This document shows positions 1,517 to 7,559 of a stretch of DNA of 64,000 nt, piece after piece. Each line of letters opens with the position of its first letter. Within the stretch, counting starts at the first letter, position 1. The position numbers and the translations under genes are program-made. Below the pieces are notes generated by a model. It saw only the letters and a program-made list of their open reading frames with translations, did not search any database and was not told where the DNA came from. This DNA comes from Ramazzottius varieornatus (taxonomy: Eukaryota > Animalia > Tardigrada). The DNA lies in NCBI GenBank assembly GCA_001949185.1, contig BDGG01000008.1, positions 248,001 to 312,000 of the forward strand, given 5' to 3'.

Positions 1517-3219
1517 CTAAATGCGAGTTGTACGTTGCTGTTCAGTCGTGGTGGTGGTAGAGGTCGCGCCACCAGTGTGGCTGCTGGAGTGCTTCTCAGC
1601 GCTGGTAGAGATGGATCCTTTGGAGATTGTAACGCCGATGGCAGTGTCGAACTTGACATCCACAGCGGTCTGGGCCTTTGCTTCCTCCAAAGCTTCGCGA
1701 GCTGCCTTGCGTTCCAGCTCCAGAGCTCGCATGGCGTACTCGGCTTCCAGCTGGATCTCGCGTTCTTGACGGTTGACTTGGTGCTCAATCATCTCCTTGC
1801 GGAACTCTTGAAAGGAGAAACAATTCGGAAACGAAACTTGGTTCAGCTCAAACTTCCGATCAAAATCGTCAGTTTAATCTTCAAATTAATTCTTTTTGAA
1901 TGATCGAGTTCCTTGCTTACCAAGATCGCGGATGTGTTGTCGTTCCAGAATCTGCCGGATCAGCTCAGCATCTCGTTCAACTTCCTCACGGTACATAGCA
2001 GCTCGTTTGCCAGCATCTCGTTCGTCCTTCGCAGCCAGTGCTTCAACCTGAAAACAAACTTGCTCTTGACGTAACAAGCTAGCACCAACCACTCTATCAG
2101 ATCTGCATAAGTCAAGTTGAAGTAAAGTACCTTGGCCTTGTATCGGGCGTATTCTTCCGGTCCCAAATCCTTGCGCTGCATCTGGGTCAAATCCACCGTG
2201 GTTCCGGCATGGATCTCGGCGCTGGCGCCTCCGCCCAGCTGCAGGTCCAAGGTAGTGTGGATCGGTTGAGCCAACTGGGGAGCTGCCACCGTCAAAGCCT
2301 AAACAAGGAAGTGAGTTACAACAATGAAATCGAGTTCTCCATCCTCAGGTTCGTCAAATGTTGATATCCTCACATTTCTGATTTCGTCACAGAAAGAAAG
2401 GTGTCTCATCTAACCGCGACTGAACCAACCTTGTCTTCCGTGTAGGTGTATCCCGTACGGACGCTTTCCATGTTAGAGCTCTCGAAGGAAGTAACGGGTA
2501 CTGCAAGGACAGCATCAACCAATCAAGCGGGGAAGATCATTTGGTTGACTAGACAGAAACTGGCCGAAACGATGATGCTACATACCGGAGATGACGTGGG
2601 TCTCACTCTGAGTCGCTCCACCGGACGTGTGGTGCTTGATGACATCTGTCTGCTCCCGGATGGTGGAGTGGGCTCCTGTTGGGACGGTAACGGTTCGTTG
2701 CAAGCCGCCGATGGTGGGTCCTCCGGTAGTGGTGGTCACTTCGGTGCGCTGGTAGGTGGTAGCGCCACCACCCATCCCAGAACTGCCACCGCTGTGCATG
2801 CTTCCGCTCAGTCCACTGCTAGCGCTGCCCATCCCCGAGCTGTGGTGATGACTTCCCATGGCCGAACCAGAGCTGGTGTGGGATGACGAGGAATGGCGAG
2901 TTGTGCTAGAAGATCCCATGCCGGAAGTACCGGAAGAGTGGAGCTCGGTAGCAGATCCTTGGTGGCCCATCATTCCGGTAACAGTTGGATCAGGAACCAA
3001 GCCAGCCGGACGCTTGTCCTGGGGTAAGCAGTAAGGTCACAGACCGCCCAGAAGATAACCCAGTGATCTCCAGACAAAATGGGAGAACATACAAACCTGG
3101 AAGTTGAGTGCCGGATCCTCCCCTCCTCGATCAACTCCGACAGTCTTCAGCGTAGCGTTTCCCGTAGAATCGACGTCCACCTTTTCCACACGCTCGAATT
3201 TCTGCTCCTTTCCAGCCAT
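1517..3219 (-). CDS. CAHS: Cytosolic abundant heat-soluble protein, CAHS3-type (~403 aa, 6 exons)
   Basis: Exons 3219-3097, 3018-2586, 2500-2430, 2298-2131, 2047-1921 and 1806-1517 splice in frame via GT-AG introns. The C-terminal region DLGPEEYARYKAKVE...YREEVERDAELIRQILERQHIRDLEFRKEMIEHQVNRQEREIQLEAEYAMRALELER is the CAHS helical motif region, closely resembling Ramazzottius CAHS3 as recalled. Confidence 0.95.
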
Positions 3220-4184: not shown

Positions 4185-4725
4185 CTAACGATCCTGGTGA
4201 ATTACTTTCTTCTCTGTGACAATTGTTTTCTGGACGCCGACCGGTTCGATGCGTCCTCCCGTAGTAAACTCCGAAGCGGACGTGTTGAGCGTGTCCGAAC
4301 CGGTCGAGACGAATGGGCCTGGAATTTGTCCCGGATTCAGGGGAGCGCTTCCAGTTACGGCAGATGGCACCACCCCGATTGGAGTACCTGTTGAGAACAC
4401 CAAACAAAATTTACTTTCCAGAGTGGAGTTGAACGTGAAATTTTAGTGATCCAGACCTGGAGCAACAGGTGGTCTGGCGTCCACATAGTTCATCCCAGGG
4501 TCCTCTTTCCCTCGGTCTTCACGGGAATCCACCAATGTGGCTTGGCCAGACTCATCTACTTGGGCCTTGTCCACTCGCTCGTACTTGTATTCTTTGCCTG
4601 AAATACAAAGCATTTGTGAGTCTCTGTTCGAAGAAGCAACAGCGAACCCATCAGATGTTCTTACCGTCCACCTGTCCCGGAAGAGCTGCCGGGTTAGCGG
4701 ATTGCTCGTGCGTGTGATGAGGCAT
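4185..4725 (-). CDS. Small (134 aa) protein consisting of the CAHS N-terminal module plus a Pro/Gly/Thr-rich tail; no CAHS coiled-coil
   Basis: Exons 4725-4665, 4597-4457 and 4387-4185, joined by two phase-1 GT-AG introns (67 and 69 nt), give an uninterrupted ORF MPHHTHEQ...GKEYKYERVDKAQVDESGQATLVDSREDRGKEDPGMNYVDARPPVAPGTPIGVVP...QKTIVTEKKVIHQDR. Exon 2 aligns with the first ~50 aa of the adjacent CAHS. Confidence 0.8.
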
Positions 4726-5243
4726 AATTCTAGCTTGGGTTTGCTGCACAGGAAGTGGAGAATAGTCAGTCAAAGTACTGGAAAGAGAACAAGGAATTTG
4801 TTAGTGATGAAGAAGTCTGCAACGGAAAAGATAATGACACGTTTTACTGATGAGAAAGTATGGAATGGTATATTCCACCTCGCGCTTGGAAACTATTTAG
4901 CCCGAAGTCGAAATTCCTTAAGGAGGGAAACCGGTTCCATAGCAGATGTCGGTGTCAACATGGCCGCATGTCACAGTCAGGTTAATCATCTTGGTACTCG
5001 TACCACTAAATTGTTTTACTTACCTGCAGTCACCTGCTTCCCAATTATTCAAGCGCTGTTTTCGTCGAACGTCTGCCATCTCTTATCTTTTGTTTACTAC
5101 GAGCTTGTGGGACGACGGCAACAAATGACAGAAGAAAAATGCTGGATCGACCGCTATCGAATTCTGATCTAGGAAAATCCATTCTCGGCCTTTCTCAATC
5201 ATTAATTCTCAGCAAAAATTTGACAATAGTAGAAGCGATTCAT

Positions 5244-5314
5244 GCGAAGCTAGTACAGCGGTAGTATGCCTGCCTTCCAAGCAGGTGATCCGGGTTCGAC
5301 TCCCGGGTTTCGCA
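5244..5314 (+). tRNA. tRNA-Gly (anticodon TCC)
   Basis: 71-nt cloverleaf: acceptor stem GCGAAGC/GTTTCGC, anticodon arm CCTGC-CTTCCAA-GCAGG, T arm CCGGG-TTCGACT-CCCGG, followed by a TTTTT Pol III terminator. Confidence 0.96.
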
Positions 5315-5749
5315 TTTTTGCTTGTTCGAAGGAATGGATTTTCTTGAAACAAAGTCTGCCGCGCATCTACGGCATTAACACAAGGAACCCGGAAGTTAGG
5401 GGCGCAGCGCAAAGTCTAGTTTAATCGTAACAAGGATGACGCAACTCCCACATTCTTTCCTCACGTCGAGTCACAATACCGGTTACTTGGGCGATCAGCT
5501 GATCGATTTTTTCCTTGGCAGCTTCTGGTGAAGTGAAACGAACCTCCAGAACGAGCGTAACAGTTAATCTGGAGGTCCGAAATTCTGTGCTCTCGCTTCC
5601 GGTTAGGCTCGTCCAGTTCTTGGAGCACGGCTATGGTACAACTGTCATAAGCATGTGTAGTCTTTGCTTATCTTCACTTTGACGATCCCATCATAGCCAA
5701 CTTTGCGGAACTGCATCATATCAGGGGATTTGTCCAGCGGAACTTCAAA

Positions 5750-7358
5750 ATGTTGGCATGGTGCCTTGTCGCTGCGGCGCTTGCACTGTTGATCCAGCAC
5801 GTCTACTCTGGAGCGGCCTTCTCCAGGCGTAAGTCAATTTGCCCACCCAGAACATTGTGCGGACAGTGGTGATAATCTGATTCTGATCCTGATTGCTTCT
5901 TTTATCGGTTTCTAGAGAATTCATTCCGCGACCGCAACAACGATGGCGGAGACAGGGGCACAGAACGCCCTCTTCCAGTGGACCCCGATCTAATGGCTTT
6001 CAGGTACGTGCGGTTGCTCCACCCGCGAAATATGCTACGTACTGTAGCTGGATAGCTTCGAGACGGATGATGTAACCCAGAATTCAGTGGCCGTTTGCTG
6101 TTTAGCGAGGAGATCTATCGTCTAGACCAAAAAGGGAACGCTGCACTTGAAACCGTAGACTGGGCTGTGGACACCAGAAGCCGGACCGGAAAGTAGGTAT
6201 GCAAATGACCGTTGCGCAGTTTCAGGATGAAAGGGTATCATGAATGAGTTTTTTATTTGTTGCAGATTGTTCTCAAGAATGAACCAAGCACTGCTACAGA
6301 AGCCAACTTACGCCAAGCTGATAGCGCTGTTGGATCAGTATAATCCCGTAATGGGACAACGGGAAGAGGTGACGCCCGCAGAACGCCGGGACCAGTCGAG
6401 CTTTCTGGATGCGATCTTGGCGACACCGGTAATGCGGAAAACCTGGGACTTCCTCAAAAGCAAAGGTAACGGGGCTTCAGCAACGACGCCATGATATCTA
6501 TGACTTCACGACATGAGCTTTGCTCGTTTAGGTGCCGCGCCATCATCTTCTGCTGATTTCAAAAATCTCCTAAGCCGAATATGGTAAAAGGCTCATATAG
6601 CGCCGCGATATTTGAAGGCACAGATGACAGTCGAAACATATGGAGGCAATGTTTATGGTATCTTTTGAGGTTTACTGTGTACAAACGAAGAGGACAACCA
6701 GACACTTCCGGGTATGTTGCTGGTAGAACTCTGCCTTTGAGGTGGCAGTCACAGATCCCTGAGAGAGGAATGGTTGACCGCTCTTAATCAACTGCAGATT
6801 CGAACATGTGTTTGTTGGAGAGCTCGACGGACCAAGTCCTAATTCACCCGTTAGTGGATTCCATAATTGGGTTCGCTACTATCTGGAAGAGCGATCGGGA
6901 CGCGTGGAGTACCAGCGGTGGAAGGGCCAAATCGATGTAAGGTGTCACTTATTTGCTATTTTGAAGACTTTGCTGTCACTGGTTGATTTTCCAGCCCGAC
7001 ATTTTCGGAATGCAGTTCAAGTGGAATGGACACTCGAAGATGAAAAGTACAATAGTAAGTAATGTTCCTACACGAATAAGGTAATGTGGTGGTTTGTGTA
7101 CCGATCAATCTTTTGCAGCGCATTGGAGAAAGCCCAGAAATGTCGATTGCGGTCTTGACAACCTGCTTCCTGTTGGTTCCCAATAACGAGTGCAAGCTAC
7201 GAATGGGAGGAGGTAAGTTACTTGCGTTCCTTCCGCTTTTGGTAACTGCTCACTGCAATCAACTTCTTGTCGCAGTACCTGTCACTGTCATAACGCACAA
7301 ATGGACAACCAAGAACCCCAACGAATTTTACGTCGCTTCGGCATATTACGACAACTGA
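5750..7358 (+). CDS. ENDOU: Poly(U)-specific endoribonuclease (EndoU/XendoU family) with predicted signal peptide
   Basis: Multi-exon. Motifs PTYAKLIALLDQY, SGFEHVFVGE, GFHNWVRYYLEE and IGESPE; hydrophobic N-terminus MLAWCLVAAALALLIQHVYS. Confidence 0.9.
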
Positions 7359-7559
7359 ATGAGGGGCACGCTGGAGTAGCAGTCTGGCAGGACTGACACA
7401 AGGACCAAAACACGGGAACCATGATTCATTGGTTTGCGATCAAATTTGTTGGGAATTGTAGAATTCTTCTGACAGAAGCTATCATTTGTTTCAAAATAAA
7501 TTCGCATAATTATTTAAGGGATCGGACATATAAACAGACAAATATCTGGAGTTTTTCAG

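What the first reader, a model, noticed from the sequence alone, without database searches (positions are those of the whole stretch)
4185..4725. Free-standing 'CAHS N-terminal module' gene in tandem with a CAHS gene
Seen: a clean 3-exon gene (only partly in the ORF track), ~1 kb upstream of the CAHS gene and on the same strand. Its exon 2, GKEYKYERVDKAQVDESGQATLVDSREDRGKEDPGMNYVDARP, aligns without gaps to the CAHS N-terminus GKEQKFERVEKVDVDSTGNATLKTVGVDRGGEDPALNFQDKRP. The protein then ends without any CAHS helical motif. Established: CAHS families are defined and searched by the C-terminal motifs, and the N-termini are regarded as variable disordered regions. From memory, a long Hypsibius CAHS begins with a similar KYERVEK..VD..DRGKEDPGMNFQDKRP stretch (needs verification). 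Inference: this ~45-aa segment is a conserved, mobile module of its own, and this gene is a cryptic desiccation-family member that CAHS motif searches would miss. It could act as a cap, competitor or adaptor for CAHS filament or gel formation.
Basis: partly seen in the sequence, partly recalled or inferred. Interest (0 to 1): 0.85.

Follow-up and report, generated by a model that had tools for sequence, protein, structure and literature searches.

The report
Stand-alone CAHS head-module protein gene
A small tardigrade gene beside a CAHS drying-tolerance gene encodes only the CAHS-type N-terminal segment; it is real, conserved in three genera, made as protein, and its orthologs switch on strongly during drying, but its role is untested.

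Summary
Confirmed. The minus-strand three-exon model (4725-4185) is exactly the public 134-aa protein RvY_12774 of Ramazzottius varieornatus, labelled "hypothetical". It lies 966 bp upstream of RvCAHS11 (RvY_12773). Residues 22-78 match the N-termini of CAHS11/14/15-type proteins (54-55% identity, E 1e-13 to 2e-18). No CAHS helical motif (CR1/CR2) is present.

It is neither a recent duplicate nor a pseudogene. Synonymous sites between module copies are saturated. Orthologs in Hypsibius exemplaris (BV898_09039/09042), Paramacrobiotus metropolitanus (XP_055337188) and three unnamed assemblies form a clade with 98/98 support and 38 invariant columns. These columns cover residues encoded on both sides of both splice junctions.

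Supplementary data of Tanaka et al. 2022 list RvY_12774 among 336 TFE-dependent reversibly condensing proteins (3 peptides). Its orthologs are induced about 40-55-fold by desiccation, like the adjacent CAHS14 orthologs. No paper in the searchable library discusses the gene or this family.

R. varieornatus has at least five module-only genes, and four of the CAHS sequences checked carry the module.

Function is inferred only: a disordered, non-polymerising protein that co-condenses with CAHS. The "cap" idea is untested, and the module-bearing N-terminus of CAHS12 lies outside the region sufficient for its filaments. The scan noted the module before on other DNA of this genome (s1-812380).

The parts
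4665..4725 (-). RvY_12774 exon 1 (ATG 4725-4723; 20 codons plus the first base of a Gly codon)
   Evidence: The encoded tail (..NPAALPGQVD) is conserved in orthologs of three genera.
4598..4664 (-). Intron 1, 67 nt, GTAAGA..TTTCAG, phase 1
   Evidence: The junction is supported by identity to P0007 and by ortholog continuity across it.
4457..4597 (-). RvY_12774 exon 2, the core of the CAHS-type N-terminal module
   Evidence: (E=1e-13 to CAHS11 exon 1).
4388..4456 (-). Intron 2, 69 nt, GTCTGG..CAACAG, phase 1. If it were retained, the frame would end after five more codons at 4443.
   Evidence: Orthologs conserve ..RP.V.PG|TPIGVV.. across the junction.
4185..4387 (-). RvY_12774 exon 3 with stop (TAG 4187-4185). 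The first ~10 codons still belong to the segment shared with CAHS. The rest is specific to this orthogroup (IPGPF and a C-terminal T-rich/KK tail).
   Evidence: (no other copy in the genome).
3097..3219 (-). RvCAHS11 exon 1, the paralogous module copy (41 codons, ends ..NFQ)
1517..3018 (-). RvCAHS11 exons 2-6 (3018-2586, 2500-2430, 2298-2131, 2047-1921, 1806-1517), including the CR1/CR2-type helical region in exons 5-6
   Evidence: The total of 403 aa and the junction sequence agree with RvCAHS11 in S3 Data of Tanaka 2022.

Best explanation
RvY_12774 is a genuine, translated, 134-aa intrinsically disordered protein of Ramazzottius varieornatus. It is one member of an unnamed family of small 'module-only' proteins, so far seen only in eutardigrades. 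Its residues 22-78 are an old paralog of the N-terminal segment of CAHS11/14/15-type proteins, but it lacks the helical CR1/CR2 region through which CAHS proteins polymerise.

The gene sits in tandem with a CAHS14-type gene. By gene numbering this pairing holds in Ramazzottius, Hypsibius and Paramacrobiotus. Its orthologs are induced with that neighbour on drying, and the protein is recovered in the same TFE-dependent reversible-condensate fraction.

Shown: the gene model, conservation under purifying selection, protein detection, ortholog induction, and the absence of CAHS helical motifs.

Inferred: on water loss the protein enters the same reversible condensates as CAHS. Because it carries one weakly beta-hairpin-forming module and no coiled-coil part, it acts as a non-polymerising partner. 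It would be either a client or a valence-limiting modulator of the CAHS network, not a filament former.

My odds: real independent conserved gene about 0.9; works inside CAHS-type condensates about 0.5; specifically caps or tunes network growth through module contacts about 0.2.
For: Gene model and annotation: exon translations equal P0007 = RvY_12774, with GT..AG introns of 67 and 69 nt.

Paralogy to CAHS: E=1e-13 to CAHS11 exon 1, and E=2e-18 over 58 aa to H. exemplaris CAHS14.

No CAHS body: BLASTP of P0007 against the CAHS11 exons hits only exon 1. Exon 3 has no other copy in the genome. No Pfam family matches.

Age and selection: synonymous sites are saturated, with dN 0.29-0.43 between module copies. 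The orthogroup clade has 98/98 support. There are 38 invariant columns across 7 orthologs. Identity to BV898_09039 is 55% over 119 aa, E=5e-40.

Protein and expression, from Tanaka et al. 2022 PLoS Biol S1 Data (PMC9592077):
- RvY_12774.1: Mascot score 234, 29% coverage, 3 unique peptides, IUPred2A 0.745, classed 'Tardigrade-unique'.
- Ortholog HDUJA.g02927: log2FC 5.77 (FDR 2.5e-83). Ortholog PARRI_09359: log2FC 5.23.
- The neighbouring CAHS14 orthologs, g02925/g02926 and PARRI_09358, are induced 5.8 and 4.4.
- Paralogs RvY_16233 and RvY_16235 are in the same fraction.

Disorder and hairpin: AF2 mean pLDDT 54, with only a hairpin at residues 31-34/40-43.

Model precedent: in CAHS D, beta-rich termini are needed for gelation, and variants missing one terminus do not gel (PMC10949331).
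Against: Which peptides were detected is not known to me.

Fractionating together in 20% TFE is not interaction, since 336 proteins are in that fraction.

For CAHS12, which has a variant of the module at residues ~5-41, the H2-H3-CR1-CR2 region is necessary and sufficient for filaments. The module is therefore not required for polymerisation in that assay.

The CAHS D N-terminal region was not shown here to be homologous to this module.

The hairpin prediction is low-confidence.

Expression change in R. varieornatus itself was not found. The paper states that this species expresses stress genes constitutively.
Confidence: 0.55

Rival explanations
1. It is an independent protectant or signal-bearing disordered protein. 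On this view it is a desiccation-induced disordered shield or solvent-replacement protein that works on its own clients. The shared module would reflect common descent, or a common function unrelated to CAHS assembly, such as a shared binding partner, a turnover signal or a localisation signal. There would be no direct effect on CAHS gels.
For: The orthogroup has its own conserved parts that CAHS lacks: the exon-1 tail, IPGPF and a C-terminal tail. Two module-only paralogs, RvY_12760 and RvY_06887, lie away from any CAHS gene and are not in the condensate fraction. The CAHS12 N-terminus is dispensable for filaments. The complex prediction gave no support, which is not evidence either way.
Against: The tandem linkage to a CAHS14-type gene appears conserved in three genera (by gene numbering), and induction nearly equals that of the neighbour. 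It is recovered with CAHS in the same fraction.
Confidence: 0.3
2. The exons are alternative 5' exons of CAHS11 or a read-through transcript. Exons 1-2 would be spliced onto downstream CAHS11 exons, and the 134-aa model would be an annotation artefact.
For: The two genes are on the same strand and only 966 bp apart. The phase-1 donor after exon 2 is frame-compatible with the phase-1 acceptor of CAHS11 exon 3 (sequence reading). I could not lay reads.
Against: Exon 3 and its stop are conserved in orthologs of three genera. Separate gene models exist in all three annotations. For the Hypsibius locus, Tanaka et al. mended g2925+g2926 from transcriptome data but left g02927 separate. The 134-aa entry was matched by 3 unique peptides. 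CAHS11 has its own ATG and its own module copy.
Confidence: 0.05
3. It is a decaying partial duplicate: a 5' fragment of a CAHS gene left by an incomplete tandem duplication, transcribed but without function.
For: It sits in tandem beside a CAHS gene and keeps only the CAHS head. Partial duplicates are common in tandem arrays.
Against: Synonymous sites are saturated while amino acids stay 51-65% identical. The ortholog clade predates the split of three genera. The reading frame is intact with canonical splice sites. The protein has been detected.
Confidence: 0.03

Closest known systems
CAHS family, long subgroup with the N-terminal module (RvCAHS11/14/15, HdCAHS14, PrCAHS14)
   Same: They share a homologous ~58-aa N-terminal segment (54-55% identity). 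Both are tardigrade-restricted and disordered. Both are in the TFE reversible-condensate fraction. Their orthologs are induced to nearly the same degree by drying, and the genes are adjacent.
   Different: RvY_12774 has no CR1/CR2 or other helical CAHS motifs. It is 134 aa against 403-527 aa. It has an extra conserved leader encoded by exon 1 and its own tail. Intron positions are not shared.
RvCAHS12 (RvY_13011), a major T-DRYP studied by Tanaka et al. 2022
   Same: It starts with a divergent variant of the same module (..EQKFERVEER..GDPALNF). Relatives P0022-P0024 are hit by the module profile.
   Different: It is a full CAHS with CR1/CR2. Its filament formation needs only the C-terminal H2-H3-CR1-CR2 region.
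Module-only paralogs RvY_16235, RvY_16233, RvY_12760 and RvY_06887 (all 'hypothetical protein')
   Same: They are small (101-181 aa) proteins that begin with the module and lack a CAHS body. RvY_16233 and RvY_16235 are also T-DRYPs.
   Different: They belong to different lineages in the module tree. They appear to be single-exon across the module. Their tails are unrelated to exon 3 of RvY_12774.
Terminal regions of CAHS D (H. exemplaris) in the dumbbell/gelation model
   Same: This is a functional analogy only. A short segment with transient beta structure sits at the end of a disordered desiccation protein. In CAHS D such ends are needed for network formation (PMC10949331).
   Different: Homology of the CAHS D N-terminus to this module was not tested here. 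In CAHS D the ends act together with a helical linker, which RvY_12774 lacks.

Membership tests
CAHS (cytosolic abundant heat-soluble) proteins | Conserved C-terminal helical motifs CR1 and CR2, present in all 40 CAHS proteins compared by Tanaka et al. 2022 (CR2 is missing in one) | tested here: not met
   BLASTP of P0007 against the CAHS11 exon translations hits only exon 1; nothing matches exons 5-6, which hold the helical region. No CAHS signature string occurs in any member of the orthogroup (listing). Exon 3 has no other copy in the genome.
CAHS (cytosolic abundant heat-soluble) proteins | Restricted to tardigrades, highly disordered and hydrophilic | tested here: met
   All named hits of the module profile among 1.84 billion representatives are R. 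varieornatus, H. exemplaris or P. metropolitanus. AF2 mean pLDDT is 54. IUPred2A is 0.745 in Tanaka S1 Data.
CAHS (cytosolic abundant heat-soluble) proteins | Heat solubility and abundance in the cytosol | not testable with these tools
   Only TFE-fraction proteomics was found. No heat-soluble proteome entry was found for this ID.
T-DRYPs (TFE-dependent reversibly condensing proteins; operational class of Tanaka et al. 2022) | Identified by nanoLC-MS/MS in the fraction that precipitates in 20% TFE and redissolves | tested here: met
   RvY_12774.1 is listed in S1 Data with 3 unique peptides, 4 PSMs and 29.1% coverage. This is taken from the paper, not re-analysed.
Module-only family (unnamed; RvY_12774 orthogroup) | Leader ..NPAALPGQ.DG, then the KE.KYERVE...EDPGMNF module, then ..PPG.PIGVV.S..SG.AP..PGPF, with no CAHS body | tested here: met
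   Alignment A2 has 38 invariant columns in 7 sequences. The clade has 98/98 support. The H. exemplaris ortholog matches at E=5e-40.
Desiccation-induced tardigrade genes | Transcript induction on drying | tested here: inconclusive
   Orthologs HDUJA.g02927 (log2FC 5.77) and PARRI_09359 (log2FC 5.23) are induced, according to Tanaka S1 Data.

The most novel reading that the evidence does not exclude
The ~58-aa module is an autonomous, weakly beta-hairpin-forming interaction element that has been joined to and separated from CAHS bodies more than once. The co-induced, tandem-linked module-only proteins (the RvY_12774 orthogroup, RvY_16233/16235) would then be dedicated monovalent regulators. They would set the valence, and so the gel point, fibre length or reversibility, of the CAHS11/12/14/15-type network during drying and rehydration. 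This would be a built-in 'chain stopper' system for a stress-induced cytoskeleton-like gel.
Probability: 0.2. Interest if true: 0.8.

Novelty: new variant of a known kind. Interest (0 to 1): 0.6.

Why it matters
CAHS proteins are the best-studied effectors of tardigrade anhydrobiosis, and current work on their gels and filaments looks only at proteins that carry the helical body. This locus shows a conserved, co-induced, tandem-linked small protein that keeps only the CAHS head. It has at least four further relatives in the same genome, and three of the five are already present, without comment, in a published condensate proteome.

This gives a concrete, cheap test of whether CAHS networks have natural regulators or partners. 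It also shows that some CAHS N-termini contain an old conserved element and are not just variable disorder, and it flags a family that motif-based CAHS censuses omit.

If the protein proves to be only one more disordered protectant, the result is modest: one more tardigrade-specific, desiccation-induced family.

Tried and rejected
Splice junctions and 3' ends were therefore not checked on reads, and no ortholog DNA could be fetched for dN/dS.
- Complex prediction of CAHS11 exon 1 with RvY_12774 residues 17-75: no answer (score 0.08). This counts neither for nor against binding.
- AF2 with the 7-row ortholog alignment: mean pLDDT 54. The model was too poor for a fold search, so none was run.
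- ESM Atlas: best feature score 0.81 (band 4.1 CTD clusters), which is chance level; structure hits were all TM<0.5. Rejected.
- Pfam: no family for any module protein.
- Exon 3 against CAHS11 exon 2: no significant similarity beyond the first ~12 residues. My first impression of a shared 'TTGG..Q(K/R)T' tail motif is dropped.
- Gene IDs are absent from the main text of all searchable papers and from the held supplements of Yoshida 2017 and Yoshida 2022.
- P0003 (5412 aa, 21 weak repeats matching only profile positions 11-32) was treated as an unrelated repeat protein.
- Direction of evolution (fusion or fission) could not be resolved: the base of the module tree is a polytomy.
- No hand-joined spliced protein was sent to any search. 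Exons were searched by reference, and full-length work used P0007, the database protein returned.

Full report
**Where we are.** The window is contig C8:248001-312000 of a 55.8-Mb, 200-contig genome. Exact matches of its proteins to GenBank entries identify it as Ramazzottius varieornatus.

**The observation.** On the minus strand there is an ATG at 4725-4723. Three exons follow:
- Exon 1 is 4725-4665.
- Exon 2 is 4597-4457.
- Exon 3 is 4387-4185, including the stop.

The two introns are 67 and 69 nt, both GT..AG and both phase 1. The three exon translations plus the two split glycine codons give 134 residues. A profile search of 1.84 billion representative proteins returned P0007, which is this sequence letter for letter. 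P0007 is GAV02177.1 / A0A1D1VKN4, "hypothetical protein RvY_12774".

I sent no hand-joined spliced protein to any search tool. Exons were searched by reference, and P0007 was used for full-length work.

**The neighbour.** The gene 966 bp downstream on the same strand has six exons: 3219-3097, 3018-2586, 2500-2430, 2298-2131, 2047-1921 and 1806-1517. Its 403 aa and junction sequence agree with RvCAHS11 = RvY_12773 in S3 Data of Tanaka et al. 2022.

**The similarity is real.**
- Exon 2 aligns without gaps to CAHS11 exon 1: 20/37 identical, E=1e-13.
- Against the H. exemplaris CAHS14 N-terminus, the match runs over residues 22-78 of RvY_12774: 55% identity, E=2e-18.

The shared segment is therefore about 58 aa and crosses the exon 2/3 junction. 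CAHS11 has an intron inside its own module copy (after NFQ), and CAHS14 and CAHS15 have none there. The module is thus not an exon-delimited unit.

**It is not a CAHS.** P0007 matches only exon 1 among the CAHS11 exons. It does not match exons 5-6, which hold the helical region. Exon 3 has no other copy in the genome. No Pfam family matches.

**Distribution of the module.** A profile of seven copies finds eight places in the genome.
- Three are CAHS genes: CAHS11, and the tandem CAHS14 and CAHS15 on C14.
- Five are small genes without a CAHS body: RvY_12774; RvY_16235 (113 aa in isoform 2) and RvY_16233 (101 aa) on C13; RvY_12760 (101 aa), 16 kb before this window; and RvY_06887 (181 aa) on C3.

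RvCAHS12 starts with a divergent variant of the module. The genome search missed it, but its relatives P0022-P0024 were hit by the profile. So four of the CAHS sequences I checked carry the module, and both module types occur with and without a CAHS body. The labels "CAHS" and "short" need at least two changes on the module tree. The base of the tree is unresolved, so I cannot say whether fusion or fission came first.

**Age and selection.** Between RvY_12774 exon 2 and the other R. varieornatus copies, synonymous sites are saturated (the NG86 estimate is undefined). dN is 0.29-0.43 and amino-acid identity is 51-65%. This excludes a recent duplication and a freely decaying fragment.

The profile search also returned orthologs:
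- BV898_09039 and BV898_09042 of Hypsibius exemplaris (165 aa each);
- XP_055337188.1 of Paramacrobiotus metropolitanus (257 aa, auto-named "CAHS 89226-like");
- three unnamed proteins from ENA, JGI and Logan assemblies.

Together with RvY_12774 they form a clade with 98/98 support. They share 38 invariant columns. The H. exemplaris ortholog aligns over 119 residues at 55% identity, E=5e-40.

The conserved stretch includes residues encoded at the end of exon 1 (..NPAALPGQ.DG) and at the start of exon 3 (..PG.PIGVV.S..SG.AP..PGPF). Both splice junctions are therefore supported by cross-species continuity, which partly makes up for the missing read evidence.

**Synteny.**
- In NCBI numbering, the H. 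exemplaris CAHS14 fragment is BV898_09038, next to BV898_09039.
- In the annotations used by Tanaka et al., the pairs are g02925-g02926 / g02927, and PARRI_09358 / PARRI_09359.

The CAHS14-type gene and the module-only gene therefore look like neighbours in three genera. This is inferred from gene numbering only.

**Published but unremarked evidence.** S1 Data of Tanaka et al. 2022 (PLoS Biol 20:e3001780, PMC9592077) lists RvY_12774.1 among the 336 "TFE-dependent reversibly condensing proteins". The entry gives Mascot score 234, 29.1% coverage, 3 unique peptides, 4 PSMs, 134 aa, pI 5.49, IUPred2A 0.745 and class "Tardigrade-unique".

Its assigned orthologs are induced on desiccation:
- HDUJA.g02927: log2FC 5.77, FDR 2.5e-83.
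- PARRI_09359: log2FC 5.23, FDR 3.9e-9.

The CAHS neighbours show almost the same induction (g02926 5.84, g02925 5.81, PARRI_09358 4.44). RvY_16233.1 (68% coverage) and RvY_16235.3 are in the same list; RvY_12760 and RvY_06887 are not.

The paper's text discusses CAHS, LEA, HSP and peroxiredoxin families, but not these proteins. None of the gene, protein or ortholog identifiers occurs in the main text of any paper in the searchable library. For the Hypsibius locus the authors merged g2925 and g2926 using transcriptome data and left g02927 separate. This argues indirectly against the "alternative 5' exon" reading.

**Structure.** AF2 with the ortholog alignment gives mean pLDDT 54 and pTM 0.14. 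The only secondary structure is a hairpin at residues 31-34/40-43, inside the module. The protein has no Cys or Trp, and 54% of its residues are P, G, S, T, A or V. It should be treated as disordered with at most a transient hairpin. No fold search was run on such a model. The ESM Atlas gave only chance-level neighbours.

**Mechanism.**
- Established by others: CAHS3 and CAHS12 form filaments through a C-terminal helical region that is necessary and sufficient. [quoted passage not shown]
- Inferred here: RvY_12774 cannot polymerise in the CAHS manner because it lacks the helical region. It is made together with its CAHS neighbour and behaves like CAHS in the TFE assay. The most economical reading is a non-polymerising component of the same dehydration-induced condensates. 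It could be a monovalent modulator that occupies module-binding sites, or simply a co-condensing protectant.
- Against the specific "cap" idea: the module-bearing N-terminus of CAHS12 is not needed for filaments, and the complex prediction gave no verdict.

I put the capping or tuning role at about 0.2. The broader "works within CAHS-type condensates" reading is about 0.5, and an independent protectant role about 0.3.

**Verdict.** The proposed function remains open. The gene is annotated and listed in a supplement, so the sequence itself is not new. What appears undescribed is the family, its paralogy to the CAHS head, and its conserved tandem linkage and co-induction.

**Limits.** There is no read-level confirmation. 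No ortholog DNA was available, so there is no formal dN/dS on orthologs. Synteny rests on gene numbering only. Expression data are for orthologs, not for R. varieornatus itself.

Noticed in passing
L008 (C13:654000-663999): RvY_16235 ORF about 4617-4910 (+); CAHS last exon 5625-5924 (-); CAHS first exon ATG at 6910 (-): The C13 CAHS gene (RvY_16236, 303 aa, second most abundant T-DRYP) is 88% identical to CAHS11 in the C-terminal motif. It starts without the module. The module-only gene RvY_16235 lies convergent, about 0.7 kb beyond its 3' end, and RvY_16233 lies 2.6 kb further on. This looks like a CAHS gene whose head exon was separated from the body by an inversion (gene fission).
   Followed up: partly
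L006:1483-1788 (+) = C8:231675-231980; L009:1997-2542 (+) = C3:1320496-1321041: Two more divergent module-only genes are annotated as hypothetical proteins: RvY_12760 (101 aa, beside the lanosterol synthase gene) and RvY_06887 (181 aa, Ala/Thr/Pro-rich tail). Neither is near a CAHS gene and neither is in the T-DRYP list.
   Followed up: partly
A profile search of all six frames of the window with filters off finds none; the best non-member hit in the window has E=1.9.
   Followed up: yes
window 5243-5315 (+): A tRNA-Gly (anticodon UCC) lies about 520 bp upstream of the RvY_12774 start codon, on the opposite strand.
   Followed up: yes
window about 5890-7360 (+): A multi-exon gene of the XendoU endoribonuclease family (PF09412; E=3.6e-16 and 1.3e-8 on two exon pieces) is divergent from RvY_12774.
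   Followed up: partly
window about 650-1000: This is a run of N (masked or withheld stretch) just downstream of the CAHS11 3' end. It shows as X-runs in the ORF list.
   Followed up: no
P0003 (5412 aa, source not looked up): A giant repeat protein with 21 stretches resembling only the first half of the module (..EKVEKVHVSSPGRLVIP..) scored 98 bits in sum. It is probably an unrelated repeat, but the hairpin-like motif is recurrent.
   Followed up: no
P0015 = XP_055337188.1 (P. metropolitanus): NCBI's automatic name is 'cytosolic-abundant heat soluble protein 89226-like', yet the protein has no CAHS helical motif (listing). The name probably rests on the N-terminal module alone.
   Followed up: partly
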